Origin: Octopus sinensis
Taxonomy: Eukaryota
Length of the DNA: 64,000 nt
Assembly (NCBI RefSeq): GCF_006345805.1
Contig: NC_043009.1
Coordinates: forward strand, 71,300,001-71,364,000
Direction of reading: 5' to 3'
In this document: piece after piece, positions 2,108 to 62,983 of the stretch
Layout: every line of letters starts with the position of its first letter
Numbering within the stretch: the stretch's first letter is position 1
Made by a program: the position numbers and the translations under genes
Notes under the pieces: generated by a model
Databases searched by the model: none
The model's input: the letters and a program-made list of their open reading frames with translations, nothing else
Told to the model about the DNA's origin: nothing

Positions 2108-2325
2108 GTCCTTTCTCCTTCAGGCACAAGGGGCCAGCAATTTCAGGGGAGGGCTTAAGTAGATTACATTGATTCCATTTCTCGACTGTTACTTAACTCA
2201 TCGATCCCCGAAAGGATGAAAGGCAAAGTTGACCTCAGCAGGATTTGAACTCAGAACACGAAGATAGATGAAATCGCGCTAAATATGTTTCCTTGCGTGC
2301 TAACGATTCTGCCAGCAGGTCGCCT

Positions 2326-2327
<2 letters not shown>
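2108..2327 (-). mobile_element. tRNA-derived SINE, family A (head ggcggcgagctggcagaatcgttagc), followed on + by (AAT)n 2328-2394
   Basis: Reverse strand shows a degraded A-box and the B-box gttctgagttcaaatcc, then the body gaggtcaactttgcctttcatcctttcgggg shared with more than 10 other copies in the window. Confidence 0.85.
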
Positions 2328-2394
<67 letters not shown>

Positions 2395-3101: not shown

Positions 3102-4366
3102 TTGGGTTATCCCATAAATAATGCGGTTTTTTAATACTTCTTTTATTTTTCAAGATTATGATAAACAAATTTCTTTTTTCATCAAAAAATATATTTTCCT
3201 TCATTTTCTACAATGCCCTTCCATTTATCTGGTAGACTTGCAAGGCCCCTCTTCCAAAATTCACTTGCCCGTGATGAAAAATACTCCTCCGGTGCTGTTC
3301 TACAGCATTCATATTTTTTCTTCCAAATGATTTCGAAGACTGTGGAATAAATGATAATCAGATGGGACAATGTCCAGTGAATATGGTGGGTGGGGCATCG
3401 TTTCCCATTCAAACTGCTCCAGCCTTTGGAATGCCATCCTCGATGTATGTGGCCAAGCATTATCCTGATGGAAGAACACCTTTCGTCTCGAAACCAAAGA
3501 TGGTCATTTTCCTTTTAGCGCTGACTTGAGCCGCTCAAGTTGCTTGCAGTAGATCTCCTTTGTTATCGTTTGGTTTGGGTTTAAAAGTTCGAAGTAGACT
3601 AAACCTTCCATATCCCATCAAACAGATAATAACACCTTACGTGGGTGATGACCTTCTTTAGCCTAGGGTGTCAGTGTTTCTCCTTTCCCTACCCACAGTC
3701 TTCGGCGCTTGACATTTTTATAGAGAACCCATTTCTCGTCACCAGTCACTGTTTGGTCCAAAAAAGGTTCATTTGTGAGATTTGACAGCAAAGAAGAGCA
3801 CACATTCAGTCTCTGTGCGCGATTAGACTCTGAAATTTTGTGAGGGACCCATTGATCCAATTTGCTGACTTTTCCGATGGCACGCAGGTGTTGATGACTG
3901 GTTGAATGACCAAATACAAGCTTCTCTGCTAGTTCCTCAATAGTTACGATGGGATTTTATACCACCACGTTTTGCAGGACGTCCTCGTCGACCTCTACAG
4001 ATCTTCCAGGACGAGGCTTGTCTTCTAGACTGTAGGTTCCGGCTCGGAATTTCTGGAACGACCGTTGTCACTGGCTTACGCTTATTGTCCGATCCTCATA
4101 TACTGCATTAATATTCTTCGCACTTTCCGTTGCGTTGTTGCTTTATTGAACTCATAAAGCAAAATATGCCAGATATGCTCCATTATAGCTTTGGAAAACT
4201 AACTGTTTAAGTCGACCTGCACTCTTCAAAGCTTGCACTAAGAATAAGGACAAGGTAAAATTACTACGTGCTTTTATAGGAAGTTGCTGCAGATAATTTA
4301 CCCCGTTCCGCTCCGACTTTTAGTTCATGCAATTAAAAAATCCGAATTATTTATGGGATGGCCCAA
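3102..4366 (-). mobile_element. Full-length decayed mariner (DD34D) DNA transposon
   Basis: TIRs ttgggttatcccataaataatgcggttttttaat (3102-) and the reverse-complement match ending at 4366, with TA on the left. Transposase motifs WVPHKI, VTGDEKWVLY, FHQDNAWPH and HPPYSLDIVPSDYHLF are split by frameshifts; ATG at 4183. Confidence 0.93.
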
Positions 4367-19000: not shown

Positions 19001-19410
19001 GTATATGAAAACTCACAGCTGGGTATGATGGAAGGCGTCAGCTGTCCATAGACAGCAGACTAAGGTGGCACTTGTTTACTGGTCATGCTTCAAGAACCCT
19101 GCAAAGAATACTTGCAGTTCCAAGCAAGGCTGATTTGTGTATGTGTTCTACCTTCACACTAGCATCGATCTGTTTCAGCCATGTTGGTAGTGGAGTACTG
19201 ATACTTCCACGTGCACCAATTACTATTGGCACCACTTCTACTCTCTTCATTAACCACAACCTTCGTATTTCCCACTTTAAATCGTCATAGTCGTTTATTT
19301 TTCCTTCTTCTTTCACATTGATCCTGTTGTCACCGGGGCATGCTATATCGATTATCGCATACGTTCTTCCTTTTTTATTCACCGTAACAATATCGTTATA
19401 TCCCACAGGT
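19000..19410 (-). mobile_element. R4/Dong-type LINE 3' fragment (RLE domain)
   Basis: ORF 19083..19406 reads DIVTVNKKGRTYAIIDIACPGD...KINDYDDLKWEIRRLW...VVPIVIGARG...LLGTASILCRVL; it ends in (TAA)n on its own strand. Confidence 0.85.
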
Positions 19411-20113
19411 TTTTGCAGTTTTCAGGATTCAAAAACCGACGACCTTCCTTTCTGTTCAAGAAATAAATTCTCTTCTTTTCTTCATTAATTACAGGATAAT
19501 AGTTTCGCTGCTCTGGATTCAAATCCTGCAGTAATCAACTTTGTCTTTCCTCATTTCGAGGTCGATAAATAAAGTACCAGTCAAAAACTGCAGAAGTGTG
19601 GAATTGTGTGAGACTCAGGTGTGATGTTTTTTTTTTGGGGGGGGGTATTGCTTCCGGTTGTTCTGAGCACAGCTCCCACCCCCACCCCTTCGTCACGTGG
19701 CTAATCACAGTACGAAACGGTAGCTTCGGAAACTGGCTAATAATGATTGGTTCCCATTGTCAGACAGAGAGATGCATTAATTAAAACATTTCCGAGCTTT
19801 CGACATGGACGACGAGTGAACTCTGCACCGATCGAGATAAACATTAGGACGAAACAAAACTGCAGTGTTGTTGTATGACTCCAGGTCAACTCTATCATTA
19901 AAGATGGCTGCTACTTTCAAATCGTAGCCAATCCGTCTTTTCTACCACACACAGAAGACGCGGGAACAAGTAACCAGATGTGTCTGTCTTTTCTTAGGCG
20001 GTGTGTAATTTGAGGCAGATTTAGTGACTATTTCTAATATGTATGATCTCAACAAAGTCCCTCTGCCTCATGATTTCTCTATTGCGACTACTTTTTAAGA
20101 TTAGCCTTGTTTT

Positions 20114-20175
<62 letters not shown>

Positions 20176-20176
<1 letters not shown>

Positions 20177-20517
20177 GCAACGTTTCTCTAAAAGAAATGG
20201 AGAAACTTTCAAAATACAAAGACCTGGAAATAGAGGTAACCAGAATGTGGAATCTAAAAACAGAAACAATTCCTATCATAATAAGTGCATTAGGCATGAT
20301 AAAAAATATTCAGACAAATACATAACAAAAACACCAGGACTTACAAACACATATAACATACAGAAAATTGCACTACTAGGCACTGCACACATCCTACGCA
20401 GAACACTTTCCATACAATAACCAACAGAGTATCACAACAAATCACAGCACATACCCAAGGCACACAGAGCTGCGCTCGGTAGTGAAGTGAAAGCACGCTA
20501 TAAAAATAAAACTACTG
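20176..20517 (+). mobile_element. R4/Dong-type LINE 3' end, same subfamily as 52817-54880
   Basis: Near-identical to 54535-54880 (NVSLKEMEKLSKYKDLEIEVTRMWNLKT plus 3' UTR); (AAT)n on both sides. Confidence 0.92.
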
Positions 20518-35286: not shown

Positions 35287-35869
35287 GTTGTTGTTGTTGT
35301 TGTTGTCGTTGTTTATTTTTAATCTGCATGTTTGTTACAGTCACTTGCCGAGGCACACCCGGCGTCCAGGGTCAAGTGAAGGATAAGAGATGTTACGGTG
35401 TGGCTTAAAGCTTGGGGCAGAAGCGAAATGTAATGCAACACATTTAAATTGGTAGGTTTGTTCTTATTAACTAAGTTTCAGTTTATATTCTGCCAAGGTC
35501 GACTTTACCTTTCATCCTTTCGGGATCGATAAAATAAGGACCAATTGAATACTGGTGCATCTCCTCCCTCAAAATTGCTGTCCTTGTGGCAAAATTTGAA
35601 ACCATTATTTTACTAAGGCATAATGATACTAATAACCCAGTATTAGATTTCAATAGACATATGCTCTTCAGAACCCAGCGTCAGTCGAGTAATGAACAGA
35701 AACAAGAAATTAAATAAATGATAAGAGAATCAGAAATGATGTCATGAACTCCAACAACGAATGCATTGCATATGATAGCAGAAACAGCTGTTAGCTAATG
35801 AAGTGCATTGCATTATTTCTTATTCCCATGTCATGTCTTTAACTTCTTGTGTGCCTGCGTGTGTACGTG

Positions 35870-35900
<31 letters not shown>

Positions 35901-36529
35901 TGTGTGTGTGTGTGCGTGTGCGTGTATATGTGTGTGTGCGAATTATTATAACATACTGTGTCTGATTACGTCGCTTCACATATTATATGTTGAAACCCTG
36001 CTTTTGAAGTGGAAAAATTGCTATAGTAACCTCTTGAAATGCAGGGCTTATCGCTGTGTTAGAAATCCTTATTCGAGACAAAACGATGGATGAGCAAAAT
36101 GTTTGTTGCGACTCTTTACGTACTGAGTTCAAATTCCGCTAAGTTCAAATTTGCCTTTAATCTTTCCGGGGTCGTTAAAATAAAGCACACTCCTTGCTTC
36201 CTTCTTTCTTTTCAACATTGTTTTGTAATTCGCCATGCACATTACAAGTGACTAAGCACTACAACAATTATAAACACACACACACACACATATAATACAA
36301 AGAAAGAGGCTTTATTATTTGGCTTCCCACGAGCTTCAAGGAAGAAACACATAATGCATTTTTCATTAGCATCTAACAGTAATTTAACTTTTCCTTCCAT
36401 AAATTATGATGACAACACCACACATTATCTCCGCGACACTCCACAAGTAAATCTCACAACATCAAATATTTTAAACGCATTTTACTTTATGTCTTTAAGT
36501 ACATTTTAAAGGTGGAATGCTAGTTGTGT

Positions 36530-36915: not shown

Positions 36916-38339
36916 ATTTCAATTTAATTTTACTTTAATTTTTATTGGCTCAAAAAGCAAAAGCAAGGCCATGTAGGGGGACAGGGAGTTATGTACAGGG
37001 AGGGTGGTCATACAAAGAGTTCAGGCCATTTCTGGTCAAGAGAGACTTTGAACCGAGCGGTCGTCGGCATCTTCACCATCTCGTCTGGCAGCTTATTCCA
37101 CGGATCCGCAACCCGGACGGAGAAAGCTCCTCTCCTTCGATTGAGATGAAATCGTCGCAGATAGAGCTTTTCGGAGTGACCACGCAGCCCACGCTCTGGA
37201 GCAGGAGTGAAGAACAGCTCTTTCCAGAGGTTACACTTTCCGCTTATGATGTTGTGATCGAGAATGAGATCTCCACGGCGTCGTCGTTTTTCGAGAGAAT
37301 AAAGGTCGAGCGTCTTCAGCCTTTCTTCATAACACAAATGCTTGAGACCAAGAACCATGTGGGTAGCCAGCTTCTGGACTCTTTCGATATGATGTATGTC
37401 TTTGAGGAGATAAGGAGAAGAGGCTTGAATCCCGTGCTCAATATGGGTCTCACCAGCGCGACATAGAGCGGTAGGAATATGGTTGCCGTGAGTATTCCGA
37501 ATGACCGTCGAATCAAAAACAGAACTCCGTGTGCTTTGTTGGCTACATGGACGCATTGGGCCGAAGGTGAAAAGGAAGAATCCACCAAGATACCCAGGTC
37601 CTTTACTTGGTCGGTCTTCTCCAGCAGCAGACGACCCGGCTCGAAATCAAGTTGAGTTGCAGGAGAGGAGCCAACAGGCAGATGACAGCACTTTGACACG
37701 TTCAGACACAGGTCCCATTCGTTTGACCATCTCCAAACTTGGTGGAGGCATCGACGAAGATCATCTATATCACTGCGAGGAGCGACCAGTTTGACATCGT
37801 CGGCAAATAAAAGGGTGTGCTGCGTGAGATCGTCGGGCAAGTCATTGATGAAGACTAAAAACAACAACGGCCCAAGCACTGAACCTTGAGGCACGCCACT
37901 GCTCGCACTGGAGACGTCGAACAACGAACCATTAACTTGGACTTGGAAGGAGCGATTTGAGAGGAAGGCACCAACCCATCGTACAATATCCGGATGGAAA
38001 CGATATGCTTAAAGCTTGACAAGTAATAGGCGGTGGTTAACCGAGTCAAAAGCTTTGGCAAAGTCCAATAAAACGATGTCAACAGCATCACCATCATCCG
38101 GGATACACGTCACCTATTCTTCCATTACCAGTAAGTTGGTCAAGCATGATCTCTTCGGCACGAAGCCGTGCTGGGAATCAGAGATAGAGGCTGTGTTTTG
38201 GAGGTGGAGCAACATACTTTTCTTGAGGATGGTTTCGAACATCTTGCTGATTATTGAAGTAAGGGAAACCGGTCGGTAGTTAAGCGGGTCTAGGCGGCTC
38301 CCTTTCTTGAAAATCGGGCAGATTATCGCTGTTCTCCAG
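36916..38339 (-). mobile_element. 5'-truncated CR1-group LINE, reverse transcriptase plus C-terminus, frameshifted
   Basis: WRTAIICPIFKKG..NYRPVSLTS, QHGFVPKRSCLTNLL, LDFAKAFD, GVPQGSVLGPLLFLVFINDL, LFADDVKL and ...FSVRVADPWNKLP; A/T-rich tail near 36916-36945; the 5' break sits at a (TA)n(TG)n tract. Confidence 0.9.
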
Positions 38340-39670: not shown

Positions 39671-39689
39671 AAGAGACACTGCATATTCT

Positions 39690-39795
39690 CATGGAATCAG
39701 CGGAAACGTTGTGATAACAACAAACAAGATGAGGACAAATATCCGTCAATTGTAAATAATGTAAATAATGTACATAATTCCTCATCTCTTAAATA
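39690..39795 (+). mobile_element. Partial copy of the hammerhead-bearing short element (3' half only)
   Basis: cagcggaaacgttgtgataacaacaaacaagatgaggacaaatatccgtcaattgtaaataatgt matches 41964-42037 and 55086-55159. Confidence 0.8.
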
Positions 39796-41545: not shown

Positions 41546-41806
41546 CCTTTACAGCTGAGAGGTAAGCGAGATATTTATAATAGGATCGCAAAATCCCTAG
41601 AATTGAGAGGGAAAGCTTTAGCTAAGGCAGTGCGTTCGTGAGAATATAAAACAAAATAGAGAGAAGAGAGTGGGGGTGGAGGAGAAGCCGAATCCAAGAG
41701 AAAAAGCTGTCGTCGGCATCGATTTCTACGGTTGAAACGGTAAAATTCATTTGAAATATGAATTATTTCAAGTTGCTGTTGAGAATCAGAGTAAGCTAAA
41801 GTTTGT

Positions 41807-41828
41807 ACAGTTCGATTCCAGGCAGAGA

Positions 41829-41884
<56 letters not shown>

Positions 41885-42035
41885 TCGAAAAATACCTTAG
41901 GAATGAGAACCCAGCTTCGAAATTTCCCCCAAGACACCTGATGAAGGCTTCTAGAAAGTACATCAACCGAAATGTTGTGTTAACAACAAACAAAATGAGG
42001 ACAAATTAGGGTCAAATGTAAATAATGTAAATAAT
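41807..42035 (+). mobile_element. Short non-autonomous retroelement with a minimal hammerhead motif and a 16-bp TSD (retrozyme/Penelope pLTR-like)
   Basis: Flanked by the perfect direct repeat gtaagctaaagtttgt (41791-41806 and 42036-42051); internal (AAT)n; hammerhead at 41933-41981. Confidence 0.75.
41933..41981 (+). ncRNA. Minimal type-I hammerhead ribozyme motif (mutated copy)
   Basis: gacac (stem I) - CUGAUGA 41938-44 - stem II gg..cc - GAAA 41969-72 - u(c)GUU - guguu (stem I'). Confidence 0.7.
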
Positions 42036-42369
42036 GTAAGCTAAAGTTTGTTTTGCGTTATTAAATGTTTAAAAAATTAATGACTGTATTCAGAATGAAA
42101 CGAAGATTTTATAAGCTGAAACTAGAATTGGTTTTCTAATAATGTTTCAAGCTTTCATAAAGAGAGCAGACGTCAGTTAATATGAAAGATTATGAGTGAA
42201 TATTTTAACCATTTCTGAAGAAACACAGAAAACGTCAGTTCTTATGAAATTAGGGGAACAAAGTTTTATTAAAAACTGCTAGGCATGTGGTATTTCGTTG
42301 TGCAACCATAATATACTATAAAGTATATTTTTTTTATTTTTATGAGTGAAGGGGTAAAACTCTCCCGGA

Positions 42370-44157: not shown

Positions 44158-44165
44158 GTTATCTC

Positions 44166-44345
44166 CGACGCGGCGAGATGGCAGAATCGTTATGAAATGC
44201 TTAAAAGCATTTCGTCCGTCTTCAGGTTCTGGCTTCAAATTCTGCCAAGGTCGACTTAGCCTTTCCTCCTTTCGATAAAATAAATACCAGTTGACTACTG
44301 GGGTCGATGTAATCGACTTATCCCTCTCCCGAATCTGCTGGATTG
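44166..44345 (+). mobile_element. SINE family A after (ATT)n
   Basis: ggcgagatggcagaatcgtta...gttctggcttcaaattctgcc...ggggtcgatgtaatcgac. Confidence 0.85.
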
Positions 44346-46603: not shown

Positions 46604-47556
46604 TCTGAATGAAAAGTGGCAAGAAAAACCTCTCTATGGCAAATACCCAAAGAGAGCGAATAATGCAGATGTTGACAAAGCTCTGACCCATCAATGGCTA
46701 ATGGCCTCTGGCTTAAAATCTGAAACAGAAGGGTTTATCATAGCAGCTCAAGATCAATGCCTACCAACAAGAAACTACCAGGCCAACATATTAAAGAACG
46801 GCAGTAGCCCAACATGTCGTGTATGTCAACAACAAAATGAAACCATTGATCATGTTGTCTCCAAGTGCAGTCTTCTAGCGCCTACAGAGTATCTCAACAG
46901 GCATGATAGAGCTGCACAATATATTCACTGGGTAATTTGCAAAATCCTGGATTTGCCCCATGATAAAAACTGGTGGGAACACAAACCACCTCCAGTGCTT
47001 GAAAATGACCACATCTTACTCCTCTGGAACTTCACCATTCAAACTGACAGAAAGATAGATGCGAATAGGCCAGACATCATATTGAAAGACTTCAGACAAA
47101 AATCATGCCTCCTCATTGATATGACTGTCCCAATCGATATAAACGTATCTGTCAATACCTACCAGAAACTGAGCAAATATAAAGATCTGGAAATAGAAAT
47201 CAGCAAAATGTGGACCCTGAAGACTAAAACAGTACCTGGGAATAATAGCAAAAGGGGCTGATTGCTACCTAACTCAGATACCAGGAAACCCAAAATGGCA
47301 GAAATTCAAAAGATAGTGCTCATGGGAACTGCTCATATCCTACGAAAAATACTTTCTATGTAATCTCAAGGTTTAAAACAAACATAATTTTCGGTTTGTT
47401 TTTTTAGACATTCACTAATACAACACCAAAATATATATATATATATATGGCACACTAGGCATAACAACAACATGAACTTCCAGCCTGTTGTCTCTTGAGG
47501 TCTCTGGGTGAGACTTGGAGCCAACTTGTACAAATATAAAGCAAAAGTCAAACATA

Positions 47557-47557
<1 letters not shown>
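46604..47557 (+). mobile_element. R4/Dong-type LINE 3' fragment, second subfamily
   Basis: ORF 46701..47261 contains a CCHC knuckle (CRVC...H....C), RHD, RPDII..IDM and KLSKY; there is a deletion near 47240; (AAT)n on both sides. Confidence 0.92.
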
Positions 47558-52267: not shown

Positions 52268-52450
52268 TTTTCAGAGAGGGGTCTAGTCGAATACATCGAC
52301 CCCAATGTTTCACTATTATTTAATTTATCGATCCCGAAAGGATGAAGGGCAAAGTCGACCTCGATGGAATTTGAACTCCGAACGTAACGGCAGACGAAAT
52401 ACCGCTAAGCATTTCGTCCAGCGTACTAACGATTCTTCCTCCTTGCCACC
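52268..52450 (-). mobile_element. SINE family A
   Basis: Same body as other family A copies. Confidence 0.85.
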
Positions 52451-52454
52451 TCAC

Positions 52455-52537
<83 letters not shown>

Positions 52538-52818: not shown

Positions 52819-54880
52819 GGATCATATGGCTGTAAAGATCAACTAATGATTAATAAAGCCATAACTGAAGACAGCCACAGAAAGAAGAAAGGCCTCAGTA
52901 TGGCCTGGATTGACTACAAAAAGGCGTTTGATAGCATCCCCCACAAATGGATTCTCGAAACTCTAGCCATTAACAAAGTAGCACCAACAATAATAAAATT
53001 CATAGGGCACTCTATGAATAAATGGCAAACAGTCCTACACCACCAAACAAAAGAGGGACTCATGAAAACCAAAGACATCTCCATTAGAAGAGGAATATTC
53101 CAGGGAGACACGCTCTCTCCACTCCTTTTCTGCTTGGCACTGTCACCTCTATCTGATATGCTAAATAGAACTGGATGCGGATATAAATGTTACGGCAAAA
53201 CGATCAGCCACCTTTTATATATGGATGACCTAAAACTATACGCTACAAATGACAAACAGCTGGAAACACTATTAAAGACAGTTCATGGATTTACCAAAGA
53301 AATAGATATGAAATTTGGATTAGAAAAATGCGCCAAAGTAACCATGAAAAGAGGAAAACTAGTTAAGAGTAGCAACATCACACTAGATAAAACCAATGAA
53401 GTAAAAGAATTAGACCAAAGCCAAATTGACAAATACTTATGAATCCATGAACTAGATCAGACACAACACACACAAATGAAAGAGAAAATAAAAAAAGAAT
53501 ATTATAGACGAGTTAGATCACTACTAAAAACAGAGCTCAATGCTAAAAACAAGATAATAGGTATTAACACTTTAGCTGTCCCAGTTATAAGTTACAGCTA
53601 CAATATCCATAACTGGACACTAAATGAACTGACCAAAATAGATAGGAAAACAAGAAAAATAATGACAGGATCTAGGATGCATCACCCAAAATCTGACATA
53701 GAAAGACTATATATACAACGTATAGAAAGTGGTAGAGGCCTTATACAACTGGAAAACTACTATAAAATAACCACCATAGGACTGCAAAAATATCTACTTC
53801 AAAAGGAAGGAAAACTGATCCAGAGAGCAGCAAAACACGAGCAAAACAAAAAACTGTTCTCAGTATTTAAGGAAGCTGACAAATACAAACAAGAAATCAT
53901 ACCACCTAATAAATATGAAGAAATAGAAGAAGATGAAGAAACAACAAAAGCTATAAAACAAATGAAATCCAAACTAAAAATAGAACAGCAACGAACCATG
54001 ATAAAACGATGGCAAGAAAAGCCCCTTCATGGTAAATACTGGACTAAACTAAACGCAAAAGAAATAGACAAAGAAAAATACCAGCAATGGTTGAGAAGCT
54101 CAGGACTCAAAGCAGAAACAGAGGGATTTTTAATTGCAGCACAAGACCAAAGCCTCCCCACCAGAAATTACCAAAAACATGTAATGAAAAGAAATATTAC
54201 AAGTAACTGCAGAATATGTGGAGATGGACGAGAAACAATAAATCATATTATCTCTAGCTGCCCAGTCCTGGCTAAGAAGGAATATATTCACAGACATGAC
54301 AGAGTTGGAACCTACATACATTGGAAGCTATGCCAACATTATGGAATAACAACAGAAAAAAGATGGTATAGGCACACACCAGAAAAGGTCACAGAAAACG
54401 AGAAAGCAACCATACTCTGGGATATGCCGATACACACAGATAGAGAAATTAAGGCCAACAGACCAGATATAGTTGTCAGAGACCATGAAGAAAAAAAATG
54501 CTTTCTAATTGATGTATCAGTACCGGCAGATGACAACGTGTCTCTAAAAGAAATGGAGAAACTCTCAAAATACAAAGACCTGGAAATAGAGGTAACTAGA
54601 ATGTGGAATCTGAAAACAGAAACAATTCCTATCATAGTAGGTGCATTAGGCATGATAAAAAAATATTCAGACAAATACATAACAAAAACACCAGGACTTA
54701 CAAACACATATAACATACAGAAAATTGCACTACTAGGCACTGCACACATCCTACGCAGAACACTTTCCATACAATAACCATCAGAGCATCACAACAAATC
54801 ACAGCACATACCCAAGGCACACAGAGCTGCGCTCGGTAGTGAAGTGAAAGCACGCTATAAAAATAAAAATAAAACTACTG
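52817..54880 (+). mobile_element. 5'-truncated R4/Dong-clade non-LTR retrotransposon (RT + CCHC + restriction-like endonuclease) with one in-frame TGA at 53440-53442
   Basis: ORFs 52846..53442 and 53476..54777 are in the same frame. Motifs: WIDYKKAFDSIPH, RGIFQGDTLSPLLF, LYMDDLKLY, FGLEKC, KYL*I (expected KYLG), CRICGDGRETINHIISSC, RHD, RPDIV..IDV, KLSKY. (AAT)n on both sides. Confidence 0.96.
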
Positions 54881-55009: not shown

Positions 55010-55010
<1 letters not shown>

Positions 55011-55160
55011 TCGAAGAATACCTTGGGAATGAGAACCCAGATTCGAAATTTTTCCAAGACACCTGATGAAAGCCGGAGAATATATCAGCAGAAACGTTTT
55101 GTTAACAACAAAGAAGATGAGGACAAATTTCCGTCAAATGTAAATAATATAAATAATGTA
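55010..55160 (+). mobile_element. Hammerhead-bearing short element, third copy
   Basis: Colinear with 41885-42037; CUGAUGA at 55063-69, GAAAC-GUU at 55091-98, stem II mutated. Confidence 0.8.
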
Positions 55161-55181: not shown

Positions 55182-55669
55182 TATGTTTGACTTTTGCTTT
55201 GCATTTGTACAAGTTGACTTCAAGTCTCACCCAGAAACCTCAAGAGACAACAGGTTGGAAGTTCATGTTGTTGTTATGCCTAGGGTGCCATATATTTGGT
55301 TTTGTACATAGTATTGTTCAAGAGAATGTTTAAGCAACCATAAGAAAATAATGAGTTTCTTTTAAAATTTGAGATTACATGGGACAGTATTTTACGTAGG
55401 ATATGGGCTGTTCCCATGAGCACTATCTTTAGAATTTCTGTCATTTTGGGGTTTCTTGGTATCTAAGTTAGGTAGGAATCAGCCCCTTTTGCTATCATTC
55501 CAAGGGCAATTATGATAACAGGTATTGTTTTAGTCTTGAGGTTTCACATTTTGCCAATTTCTATTTTAAGATCTTTATACTTGCTCAGTTTCTGGTAGGT
55601 CTTGACAGATACGTTTATATCGATTGGGACAGTCATACCAATGAGGAGACATGACTTTTGTCTGAAGTC
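55182..55669 (-). mobile_element. R4/Dong-type LINE 3' fragment, same subfamily as 46604-47557
   Basis: Reverse complement matches 47087-47557 including the 3' UTR; (TTA)n on both sides. Confidence 0.9.
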
Positions 55670-62514: not shown

Positions 62515-62983
62515 AGTTATGACACAAGGCCAGCAATTTCAGGGGATTGGGGGGGGGTCGATGTAATAGACTCCCCTCCCTTAATGTTCGACTGCTACTT
62601 ATTTTATCAACCCCGAAAGGGATGAAAGGTAAAGTCGACTTCGTCGGAACTTGAACTCAGAACGTAAAGGCGGTCAAAATGCTTAGCAGTATTTCATCCG
62701 GTACGCTGACGAGTTTGCCGCTCGCTGCCCCTAACCTACGAAATATATTGGTTTCAAATTTTGGCACAAGGCCCGCAATTTGGGGAGAAGGGGGAAAATC
62801 GATTACATTGACCTCAGTGCTTTGTTAGTATTTATTTTAACGACCCCGAAAGGATGAAAGGTAAAGTTGACCCCAGCGGAATTTGAACTCAGAACGTAAA
62901 GACAGACGAAATGCCGCTAAGCATTTCGCCCTGCGCAGTAACGATTCTGCCAGCTCGCTGCCCCTAACATACGAAATATATTG
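62515..62983 (-). mobile_element. Two head-to-tail family A SINEs sharing a 30-nt flank
   Basis: ctcgctgcccctaac(c/a)tacgaaatatattg at 62721-62750 and 62954-62983. Confidence 0.8.

What the first reader, a model, noticed from the sequence alone, without database searches (positions are those of the whole stretch)
41791..42051. Hammerhead-ribozyme mini-retroelement with a 16-bp target-site duplication (retrozyme-like)
A ~230-nt non-coding insert is flanked by the perfect repeat gtaagctaaagtttgt. It has two relatives in the window (39690-39795, 55010-55160). Each copy is mutated at different sites, but the composite is a complete minimal type-I hammerhead: gacac-CUGAUGA-a-ggcug...cagcc-GAAAC-GUU/guguu. 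Stem III is reduced to the self-complementary ACGU, the form known to work as a dimer in Penelope pLTRs and non-LTR retrozymes (established). Independent insertion with a TSD and no coding sequence suggests a non-autonomous, possibly circRNA-forming family mobilised in trans (inference). It also carries an internal (AAT)n, so it seeds new Dong targets. I cannot tell whether it is already catalogued.
Basis: partly seen in the sequence, partly recalled or inferred. Interest (0 to 1): 0.72.

Follow-up and report, generated by a model that had tools for sequence, protein, structure and literature searches.

The report
Short dead retroposon with hammerhead-like motif
A 229-base non-coding insert with a clean 16-base target-site duplication is real and belongs to a small old repeat family, but its "hammerhead ribozyme" folds only as a mosaic of two decayed copies and it lacks the tandem layout of retrozymes, so it reads best as an ordinary dead short retroposon.

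Summary
The sequence facts hold. A perfect 16-bp direct repeat (41791-41806 and 42036-42051) brackets 229 non-coding bases. Two relatives exist: 55010-55160 (full unit, 87% identical) and 39696-39772 (cut short at its 5' end).

The insert has three pieces: 26 nt of unknown origin, (AAT)16, and a 155-nt unit. The unit ends in a conserved hairpin plus about 2.8 copies of TGTAAATAA. All three copies end in AATGTA and the duplication starts with GTA. So the whole insert was retroposed as one RNA by target-primed reverse transcription.

The hammerhead is only partly there. Both full copies have CUGAUGA, a bulged A, GAAA, the self-complementary ACGU (AUGU in one copy), U17 and a helix I of 5/5 or 4/5 pairs. 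Such a motif is nominally rare by chance (0.003-0.03 per window). Helix II does not form in either copy: 4 of 7 pairs, never more than 2 in a row, no compensatory change. No Rfam hammerhead model matches, even at E<=10 on about 65 nt.

The window holds no tandem unit, no second ribozyme and no Penelope-like ORF, so the retrozyme/circRNA reading is unsupported. Descent from a Penelope-type minimal hammerhead stays open (about 35%). No further copies could be retrieved.

The parts
41791..41806 (.). Target-site duplication, upstream copy (GTAAGCTAAAGTTTGT)
   Evidence: Perfect 16/16 match to 42036-42051.
41807..41832 (+). 26-nt 5' extension of unknown origin (ACAGTTCGATTCCAGGCAGAGACCTG), inside the duplication
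   Evidence: No other copy in the window. Similarity to the tRNA-like SINE family next to other (AAT)n arrays is not significant (p 0.16-0.5).
41833..41880 (+). (AAT)16 carried inside the retro-insert
   Evidence: TRF reports period 3, 16.7 copies, 100% matches. It lies between the two duplication copies.
41881..42038 (+). Repeat unit: AAC followed by 155 nt (41884-42038) shared with the other copies
   Evidence: Alignment and nhmmer E=1e-45.
41933..41981 (+). Hammerhead-like motif. Helix I 5' strand GACAC 41933-37; CUGAUGA 41938-44; bulged A 41945; would-be helix II and loop 41946-68; GAAA 41969-72; UG 41973-74; U16.1 41975; U17 41976; helix I 3' strand GUGUU 41977-81
   Evidence: Descriptor scan and pair table. 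No Rfam hammerhead hit.
41974..41987 (+). Conserved hairpin GUUGU-GUUA-ACAAC. It overlaps U16.1, U17 and the helix I 3' strand, so it competes with the hammerhead fold
   Evidence: It is the central helix of the tail-only RNAalifold consensus of the three copies, kept in 3/3 copies at 4 of its 5 pairs.
42015..42039 (+). 3'-terminal tandem repeat, about 2.8 copies of a 9-mer (AATGTAAAT, i.e. TGTAAATAA in another phase), ending ...AATGTA
   Evidence: TRF. The same end is present in all three copies.
42036..42051 (.). Target-site duplication, downstream copy. Its first 3 nt (GTA) are also the family's last 3 nt, a 3-nt overlap between target and RNA end
   Evidence: the other two copies also end in GTA before unrelated flanks.
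55010..55160 (+). Second full-length unit. Hammerhead-like motif 55058-55103 (CUGAUGA 55063-69, U17 55098). It starts at the same base, directly after an (AAT)n array. No target-site duplication was found
39696..39772 (+). Third copy, 5'-truncated inside the would-be loop II, with the same 3' end
   Evidence: E=6e-23.
39682..39692 (.). Possible decayed target-site duplication of the third copy (CATATTCTCAT; partner CATAATTCCTCAT at 39773-39785)
   Evidence: Read: 11 matches with two 1-nt gaps. No exact 8-mer is shared, so this is weak.

Best explanation
The 229 bases are a dead retrocopy made by target-primed reverse transcription, not a working ribozyme element.

Shown: the family has a fixed 3' end. 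It consists of a conserved hairpin, then about 2.8 copies of UGUAAAUAA ending ...AAUGUA. One copy is truncated from the 5' side, and one copy carries a clean 16-bp duplication of a non-repetitive target.

Inferred: an RNA ending in that tail annealed to the nicked target through GUA/TAC. A reverse transcriptase supplied in trans started in the terminal repeat, as LINEs of the UnaL2 type do with their stem-loop plus (UGUAA)n tail. It copied the 155-nt unit, ran on through an upstream (AAU)16 and 26 more nt, and then stopped. That upstream part came either from a longer parent or master locus, or from a template switch onto an (AAU)n-tailed RNA. Repair left the duplication.

The copies differ by about 13%, so they are old. 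None of them can fold a hammerhead: the core boxes and helix I are present, helix II is not. A lone motif with the zero-loop ACGU helix III would in any case need a partner. In its present state the element neither cleaves itself nor makes circles. Its only lasting effect is to have planted a microsatellite at a new site. Whether the core boxes descend from a Penelope-type minimal hammerhead or are a chance match in a LINE-type tail is left open; I lean slightly to chance or an unrelated tail.
For: Duplication and boundaries. One-step insertion: all three copies end AATGTA and the target starts GTA. 5' truncation: model positions 75-151 only. The tail is among the best-conserved stretches (51-53 of 57 identical in each pair). 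The only consensus structure is the tail hairpins. UnaL2-type tails are a stem-loop plus a 3'-terminal (UGUAA)n and are shared with partner SINEs (PMC1636434). No coding capacity. No tRNA or other small-RNA head. Hammerhead not foldable: helix II 4/7 and 4/7 pairs, at most 2 contiguous, no compensatory change. The stretch between the core boxes folds at -0.6 and -1.4 kcal/mol, within the range of shuffles. Whole-motif MFE z-scores are -0.35 and -0.54. A strict descriptor gives 0 hits. There are no Rfam hammerhead hits at gathering score, at E<=10 on 451 nt or at E<=10 on 63-66 nt. No tandem arrays.
Against: The hammerhead-like core is not trivially expected. A descriptor just loose enough to accept both copies hits nothing else in 128 kb of both strands. 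It is expected 0.0275 times per simulated window, or 0.0025 for the quality of the 41.9-kb copy; both figures are nominal because the descriptor was fitted after the fact. The motif also shows features not forced by that descriptor and listed as hallmarks of Penelope minimal hammerheads: the extra A after A9, G10.1-C11.1 in one copy, and CG at 15.2-16.2 in two copies. A mosaic of the two copies gives a 7-bp helix II (-8.0 kcal/mol). No partner LINE sharing this tail is present in the window. Only three copies were available.
Confidence: 0.6

Rival explanations
1. The unit is the 3' end of a 5'-truncated Penelope-like element, or of a non-autonomous derivative of one. CUGAUGA-A-...-GAAACGUU would then be a decayed minimal hammerhead that once acted as a dimer in tandem transcripts. 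The copies here are dead solo relics.
For: Core, bulged A, palindromic CG and a 5-bp helix I match the published consensus features. Most such motifs are solo and come from truncated elements (PMC4209133). PLEs are heavily 5'-truncated, carry the ribozyme near the 3' end and favour AT-rich or microsatellite targets (PMC8557442; PMC11167929). Nominal chance expectation is 0.003-0.03 per window. A mosaic helix II of 7 bp is possible. An AC-rich hairpin follows the motif, as in the anole element.
Against: Helix II, which is 6-8 bp in these ribozymes, is absent in both copies, and there is no compensatory change. That region is the most diverged part (13/21 identical) yet unpaired. Position 11.1 is C, A and G in the three copies. 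No Rfam hit. No GIY-YIG or PLE-type motif in the window, though only a regex test was run. No pseudo-LTR, partial tandem, inverted copy or 30-40-bp tail. The 3'-terminal short tandem repeat is a LINE-tail trait.
Confidence: 0.35
2. Two separate insertions. First, a stump of an (AAT)n-tailed element (26 nt plus array) inserted and made the 16-bp duplication. Later the 155-nt unit landed exactly at the 3' edge of the array, because the family, or the enzyme it borrows, targets (TAA)n as the neighbouring Dong-like LINEs do.
For: Both full copies begin at the same base right after an (AAT)n array. The window holds several LINEs with a restriction-like endonuclease that have (TAA)n on both sides.
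Against: The GTA shared by the unit's end and the duplication's start fits priming of this very target by this very RNA (1/64 by chance). No array remains on the 3' side of either full copy. The third copy is not at an array. A (TAA)n-specific enzyme is not expected to place the first stump in a non-repetitive target with a 16-bp duplication.
Confidence: 0.1
3. A genuine non-LTR retrozyme. Tandem copies elsewhere are transcribed, cut by dimeric hammerheads, circularised and re-inserted. The copies seen here would be solo monomers of an active family.
For: Unit size (155 nt), low GC and a duplication longer than 4 bp fall in the published range. Solo monomers of retrozyme families do exist.
Against: No tandem array. 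The motif is of the minimal type, not the canonical type with loop-loop contacts that defines metazoan retrozymes. The unit boundaries are not at the cleavage site and no permuted junction exists. About 13% divergence and broken stems argue against activity.
Confidence: 0.03
4. An internally deleted derivative of a (TAA)n-specific Dong/R4-like LINE. Its 5' 50 nt would be an HDV-like ribozyme that trims the upstream (UAA)n co-transcript, as shown for Bombyx Dong. The hammerhead-like boxes would then be incidental.
For: The unit abuts (AAT)n at a fixed base in both full copies. Dong carries a 5' self-cleaving ribozyme that cuts at the (TAA)n junction (PMC3774820). The helices UCGAA/UUCGA, CUUG/CAAG and GGG/CCC occur in the nested order typical of that fold (read).
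Against: No P4, and no match to the loop and junction consensus as I recall it. No Rfam hit from any HDV-like family. The 3' end is unlike the Dong-like 3' ends in the window. Two copies sit in non-(TAA)n targets with long duplications.
Confidence: 0.03

Closest known systems
Minimal hammerheads of Penelope-like elements (Cervera & de la Pena 2014, PMC4209133)
   Same: Type-I order of parts; CUGAUGA and GAAA boxes; an extra unpaired nucleotide after A9; helix III reduced to a 2-nt palindrome (ACGU), so only a dimer could be active; helix I of 4-5 bp; mostly solo copies on 5'-truncated retro-inserts.
   Different: Helix II, normally 6-8 bp with a near-invariant G10.1-C11.1, is missing. There is no covariation, no link to a PLE ORF or pseudo-LTR, and the insert ends in a short tandem repeat.
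Metazoan non-LTR retrozymes (Cervera & de la Pena 2020, PMC7229834; Li et al. 2026 preprint)
   Same: Small, AT-rich, non-coding, non-autonomous, with a target-site duplication longer than 4 bp.
   Different: Retrozymes are head-to-tail arrays of 150-450-bp units, each with a canonical hammerhead, and they yield circRNA. Here there are single units, a minimal-type broken motif, and fixed linear ends.
Stringent-type LINE/SINE 3' tails, e.g. eel UnaL2 and UnaSINE1/2 (PMC1636434)
   Same: A conserved stem-loop followed by about 3 copies of a short 3'-terminal repeat containing UGUAA; 5' truncation; variable duplications; mobilisation in trans through the shared tail.
   Different: No partner LINE with this tail was found. 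There is no pol III (tRNA/5S/7SL) head, so the unit is either a headless tail-derived element or the end of a longer unknown parent.
Sm-alpha SINE-like repeats of Schistosoma with hammerheads (cited in PMC4209133; otherwise from my own knowledge)
   Same: A short dispersed retroposon that carries a type-I hammerhead.
   Different: Sm-alpha ribozymes are canonical and cleave. Here cleavage is unshown and unlikely.
Retrocopies with upstream flank or template-switch chimeras; microsatellites born from non-LTR retroposons (review PMC3812793 listed, not read; otherwise from my own knowledge)
   Same: One duplication encloses the element plus foreign upstream sequence. A microsatellite is copied to a new locus.
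   Different: The array is (AAT)n, which in this genome is also the landing site of a site-specific LINE.

Membership tests
Hammerhead ribozyme, type I / PLE minimal variant | Catalytic core C3-U4-G5-A6-N7-G8-A9 ... G12-A13-A14, A15.1/U16.1, H17 not G | tested here: met
   Present in both full copies: 41938-44 with 41969-76, and 55063-69 with 55091-98. The 3' half is also present in the third copy.
Hammerhead ribozyme, type I / PLE minimal variant | Helix I of at least 4 bp flanking the core | tested here: met
   5/5 pairs (GACAC/GUGUU) and 4/5 pairs (GACAC/UUGUU; the 1.1-2.1 pair is broken). The 3' strand is also part of a competing conserved hairpin.
Hammerhead ribozyme, type I / PLE minimal variant | Helix II of at least 4 contiguous bp (6-8 in PLE variants), closed by G10.1-C11.1 | tested here: not met
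   4/7 pairs in each copy, at most 2 contiguous. 10.1-11.1 is G-C in one copy and A-A in the other. Position 11.1 is C, A and G across the three copies. The fold is no better than shuffles. A strict descriptor gives 0 hits.
Hammerhead ribozyme, type I / PLE minimal variant | Extra unpaired nucleotide between A9 and 10.1; palindromic 15.2-16.2 | tested here: met
   A at 41945 and 55070. CG in two copies and UG in one, a CpG to TpG change. The feature list comes from PMC4209133.
Hammerhead ribozyme, type I / PLE minimal variant | Covariation or compensatory changes in the helices across family members | tested here: inconclusive
   0 compensatory changes, but only 2 copies are informative for the 5' strands.
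Hammerhead ribozyme, type I / PLE minimal variant | Match to curated covariance models (the Rfam hammerhead families) | tested here: not met
   No hit at gathering score, at E<=10 on 451 nt or at E<=10 on 63-66 nt. Caveat: I do not know how well these models cover variants without helix III.
Hammerhead ribozyme, type I / PLE minimal variant | Self-cleavage 3' of H17 | not testable with these tools
   Needs transcription of monomer and dimer constructs.
Non-LTR retrozyme | Head-to-tail tandem units, at least two with complete hammerheads | tested here: not met
   TRF with periods up to 1000 finds no array with period above 48 in the window. nhmmer finds three solo copies.
Non-LTR retrozyme | Canonical type-I hammerhead with loop 1-loop 2 contacts | tested here: not met
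   Open helix I without a loop 1, and no helix II. Definition from PMC7229834.
Non-LTR retrozyme | Circular RNA product | not testable with these tools
   No transcriptome data available.
Penelope-like element (truncated copy) | Continuity with, or linkage to, an RT plus GIY-YIG ORF | tested here: inconclusive
   No GIY-YIG or PLE motif was found by regex on the six-frame translation. Pfam was run on only 13 ORFs. A 64-kb window says little about the genome.
Penelope-like element (truncated copy) | Pseudo-LTR or partial tandem, adjacent inverted copy, 30-40-bp tail | tested here: not met
   No minus-strand or tandem partner next to any copy.
LINE-dependent short retroposon (SINE-like or tail-derived) | Fixed 3' end, 5' truncation, target-site duplication of variable length | tested here: met
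LINE-dependent short retroposon (SINE-like or tail-derived) | Conserved 3' stem-loop plus short terminal tandem repeat | tested here: met
   Compared with UnaL2.
LINE-dependent short retroposon (SINE-like or tail-derived) | Tail shared with an autonomous partner LINE | not testable with these tools
   None of the LINE 3' ends in the window resembles the tail. The source genome could not be searched.
LINE-dependent short retroposon (SINE-like or tail-derived) | Pol III head derived from tRNA, 5S or 7SL (true SINE) | tested here: not met
   ARAGORN found no tRNA. Rfam at E<=10 found none.
Dong / R4-clade LINE (the neighbours, not the finding) | RT followed by a CCHC finger and a restriction-like endonuclease; insertion inside (TAA)n | tested here: met
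   RVT_1 and zf-RVT hits. CRICG...C and RPD...D...K motifs read from the translation. (TAA)n on both sides of 52819-54880 and of 46604-47557.

The most novel reading that the evidence does not exclude
The family is a hammerhead-bearing, headless short retroposon that is independent of Penelope ORFs and travels with its own (AAT)n array. Each new copy would create a landing pad for the (TAA)n-specific Dong-like LINEs that crowd this genome, a self-reinforcing loop between two unrelated retroelements. The ribozyme would have been active as a dimer in master copies. The unusually diverged but unpaired helix II region would then reflect rapid turnover of the ribozyme in the masters.
Probability: 0.07. 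Interest if true: 0.55.

Novelty: new member of a known kind. Interest (0 to 1): 0.2.

Why it matters
As it stands, this is an annotation result. It defines a small, probably uncatalogued family of short retroposons and gives a clean example of a microsatellite being copied to a new locus inside a retro-insert, in a genome where (TAA)n is itself the target of a site-specific LINE. It also carries a methodological caution: a ribozyme rebuilt as a mosaic of decayed copies can look complete while no copy, and no parsimonious ancestor, folds. If genome-wide copies later restore helix II with covariation, the family would add one more lineage to the known Penelope-type minimal hammerheads. That would be useful, but not a new kind of element.

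Tried and rejected
1. More copies from outside the window. A six-frame translation of both full copies, joined into one protein query, gave no hit at E<=1. Exact-pattern scans of metagenome contigs (2 scans), viral contigs and prokaryote genome contigs gave only chance matches, confirmed with nhmmer. The window's own Dong-like ORF is not on record. Its closest relatives sit on contigs of about 1 kb with no unit. The source organism stays unidentified. From memory only, the tRNA-like SINE in the window resembles one common in octopus genomes; this is untested.
2. A paralogous empty site for the 41.8-kb insertion: none in the window.
3. The 26-nt head as a piece of the tRNA-like SINE family that abuts other (AAT)n arrays: not significant.
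4. C/D-box snoRNA reading (snoR160, E=0.09, 25 bits against a gathering score of 42; no D box): rejected.
5. HDV-like ribozyme in the 5' 50 nt: helices occur in the right order, but there is no P4, no consensus loops and no Rfam hit.
6. Coding reading. An ATG inside CUGAUGA opens a short frame (MKA...NV.LTT.KMRTN) kept in all three copies. This recalls the anole PLE, whose ORF starts within the ribozyme. But the frame is only 22-25 codons, stops at the terminal repeat, and has no protein match.
7. Thermodynamic signal: MFE z-scores of -0.35, -0.54, +0.40 and +0.07, so none.
8. Tail similarity to the LINE at 37.3-38.0 kb or to the Dong-like 3' ends: none.
9. Supplements of the two PLE papers, which might hold mollusc consensus sequences, are not held as text.
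Full report
THE OBSERVATION. The window is eukaryotic, 37% G+C and rich in simple repeats: 10.5% of its bases lie in arrays of period 6 or less. At 41791-41806 and 42036-42051 there is a perfect 16-bp direct repeat, GTAAGCTAAAGTTTGT. In my listing of 16-mers repeated within 400 nt, all other printed hits are microsatellite edges; only the first 60 of 379 were printed. The 229 nt in between have no long open frame. Two relatives exist in the window. 55010-55160 is 87% identical over the whole unit. 39696-39772 is 87% identical over 77 nt and lacks the 5' half. nhmmer with a profile of the three finds nothing else.

ANATOMY. The insert has three pieces: 26 nt found nowhere else in the window (41807-41832), a pure (AAT)16 (41833-41880), and a 155-nt unit (41884-42038) shared with the other copies. 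The unit ends in a conserved hairpin GUUGU-GUUA-ACAAC (41974-41987). After it comes a well-conserved stretch and about 2.8 copies of a 9-mer (TGTAAATAA in one phase), finishing ...AATGTA.

All three copies end in AATGTA before unrelated flanks, and the duplicated target begins with GTA. The duplication is thus 13 nt plus a 3-nt overlap between the target and the RNA end. This is what priming of a nicked target on that RNA end would leave. It ties the duplication to the unit's own 3' end, so the 26 nt, the array and the unit went in as one RNA.

The third copy is cut from the 5' side and has a possible decayed duplication (CATATTCTCAT / CATAATTCCTCAT, weak). The 55-kb copy has none that I could find. 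A fixed 3' end, 5' truncation and a variable duplication together are the signature of target-primed reverse transcription by an enzyme acting in trans.

THE HAMMERHEAD CLAIM. Both full copies read GACAC-CUGAUGA-A-(21-24 nt)-GAAA-YG-U-U-(G/U)UGUU.
- The core boxes, A15.1/U16.1 and U17 (41976; 55098) are in place.
- Helix I is 5/5 and 4/5 pairs.
- There is an unpaired A after A9.
- 15.2-16.2 is the palindrome CG in two copies and UG in the third, a CpG to TpG change.

According to Cervera & de la Pena 2014, the extra nucleotide, the palindromic 15.2-16.2, a short helix I and solo genomic copies are typical of the minimal hammerheads of Penelope-like elements, which can only act as dimers.

A descriptor just loose enough to accept both copies hits nothing else on either strand of the window. 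It is expected 0.0275 times per simulated 64-kb window, or 0.0025 at the quality of the 41.9-kb copy. These figures are nominal, because the descriptor was fitted to the case.

Several results count against the claim.
- The same paper describes helix II as long (6-8 bp) and closed by a near-invariant G10.1-C11.1. Here helix II pairs at 4 of 7 positions in each copy and never more than 2 in a row. 10.1-11.1 is G-C in one copy and A-A in the other. Position 11.1 is C, A and G in the three copies. No difference between copies is compensatory.
- The stretch between the boxes folds at -0.6 and -1.4 kcal/mol, no better than shuffles. Only a mosaic that takes the pairing base from whichever copy has it gives a stem (-8.0 kcal/mol).
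- The same stretch is the most diverged part of the unit: 13/21 identical plus a 3-nt indel, against about 90% elsewhere. Simple decay from one perfect ancestor does not predict this. Compensated evolution in master copies would leave each copy paired. This remains unexplained.
- RNAalifold on the three copies returns only the tail hairpins, one of which uses the helix I 3' strand, with zero compensatory pairs.
- MFE z-scores are near zero.
- No Rfam hammerhead family matches at gathering score, at E<=10 on 451 nt, or at E<=10 when only 63-66 nt are searched. I do not know how well those models cover variants without helix III, so this is a weaker negative than the helix II result.

My reading: no copy here is a ribozyme. 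Descent from a real minimal hammerhead is possible (about 35%) but not shown.

THE RETROZYME CLAIM. Metazoan non-LTR retrozymes are head-to-tail arrays of 150-450-bp units. Each unit has a canonical type-I hammerhead, and at least two are needed to release a monomer that is then circularised. Isolated motifs are not expected to give circles (PMC7229834; Li et al. 2026 preprint). In the window there is no tandem array with a period above 48. Each copy is solo. The motif is of the minimal rather than the canonical kind. The unit has fixed linear ends that do not coincide with the predicted cleavage site.

WHAT MOVED IT. A conserved 3' stem-loop followed by about three copies of a short terminal repeat containing UGUAA is the organisation of the eel UnaL2 tail. 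That tail is shared with its partner SINEs, and reverse transcription starts in the repeat with slippage (PMC1636434). By analogy I favour a LINE-type partner. None of the LINE ends in the window matches, and the unit has no tRNA, 5S or 7SL head. So it is either a headless tail-derived element or the end of a longer parent. A Penelope-like partner is the main rival. Such elements are heavily 5'-truncated and carry the ribozyme near the 3' end. But I found no GIY-YIG motif (regex only) and no pseudo-LTR, inverted partner or tail.

Both full copies start at the same base directly after an (AAT)n array. This could mean that the array is internal to a longer element. It could mean read-through from a master locus. 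Or it could mean a template switch onto an (AAU)n-tailed RNA; the Dong-like LINE RNAs of this genome have such tails. Three copies cannot separate these readings.

CONTEXT. The 55-kb copy lies between the 3' ends of two LINEs that point towards each other. The LINE at 52819-54880 has RVT_1 and zf-RVT hits, plus a CCHC finger and an RPD...D...K restriction-like endonuclease motif. It has (TAA)n on both sides, as expected for a Dong/R4-like, (TAA)n-specific element. Bombyx Dong itself sits in TAA repeats and has a 5' self-cleaving ribozyme (PMC3774820). Further fragments of the same kind lie at 46604-47557, 20074-20322, 19086-19421 (-) and from 55186 (-). The array upstream of the 55-kb copy may be an example, but the order of events cannot be read from this window.

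SEARCH FOR MORE COPIES. This would have been decisive, and it failed. The six-frame protein trick gave no hit. Pattern scans of the metagenome, viral and prokaryote collections gave only chance matches.

VERDICT. The element is a dead, short, non-autonomous retroposon copy inserted by target-primed reverse transcription together with a microsatellite. It carries a hammerhead-like core that cannot fold, and it is not a retrozyme. It is a new member of a known kind. Interest is low (0.2), unless genome-wide copies restore helix II.

Noticed in passing
52819-54880 (+); also 46604-47557 (+), 20074-20322 (+), 19086-19421 (-), about 55186-55260 (-): Several 5'-truncated copies of a LINE with RT, a CCHC finger and a restriction-like endonuclease (RPD...D...K). 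Each is embedded in or tailed by (TAA)n/(AAT)n arrays, which makes it a Dong/R4-like microsatellite-specific element. Closest database relatives are 91% (a Logan run) and 80% (GCA_024449705.1) identical. Relatives at about 55% occur in corals, fish, shrimp, anemones and starfish.
   Followed up: partly
2180-2328 (-), 52306-52455 (-), 44163-44310 (+); fragments near 36110-36185 and 35480-35545: A tRNA-like SINE family with box-B-like GAGTTCAAATCC. The 5' end of each copy abuts an (ATT)n array. ARAGORN does not call it. From memory it resembles a SINE common in octopus genomes; this is untested.
   Followed up: partly
whole window: Extreme simple-repeat load: 102 TRF arrays, with 10.5% of bases in arrays of period 6 or less, and about a dozen (AAT)n loci. 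Most of the (AAT)n arrays touch a Dong-like LINE end or the tRNA-like SINE, so retroelements and this microsatellite seem to spread together.
   Followed up: partly
37319-38008 (-), 3' end near 36930: A fragment of a different LINE (RVT_1, E=1e-14, with an FADD motif). It ends in an AATAAA-containing AT-rich stretch followed by (TCTG)n and is unrelated to the finding's tail.
   Followed up: partly
3185-3956 (-): Two adjacent frames look like a decayed mariner-type transposase by eye (TGDEKW..Y and LPDKW motifs). Pfam gave no hit at E<=0.01.
   Followed up: partly
41946-41968 versus 55071-55090: The stretch between the two hammerhead boxes is about 4 times more diverged than the rest of the unit, yet it is unpaired in both copies. 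This is unexplained.
   Followed up: partly
42008-42010 versus 55130-55132 and 39744-39746: A 3-nt block in the tail reads AGG in one copy and its base-for-base complement TCC in the other two. In the one copy it allows a long-range pairing with GACACCUGA.
   Followed up: no
41884-41935 and 55010-55060: The 5' 50 nt of the unit, directly after (AAT)n, has helices UCGAA/UUCGA, CUUG/CAAG and GGG/CCC in the nested order of HDV-like ribozymes, the class that Dong uses at its 5' end. There is no P4 and no Rfam hit. This is probably chance.
   Followed up: partly
62706-62760 (+) and 11927-11870 (-): Two other CUGANGAG...CGAAA co-occurrences without convincing stems. In all, 6 core-only matches in the window against 1.2 expected, two of them the family copies.
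   Followed up: no
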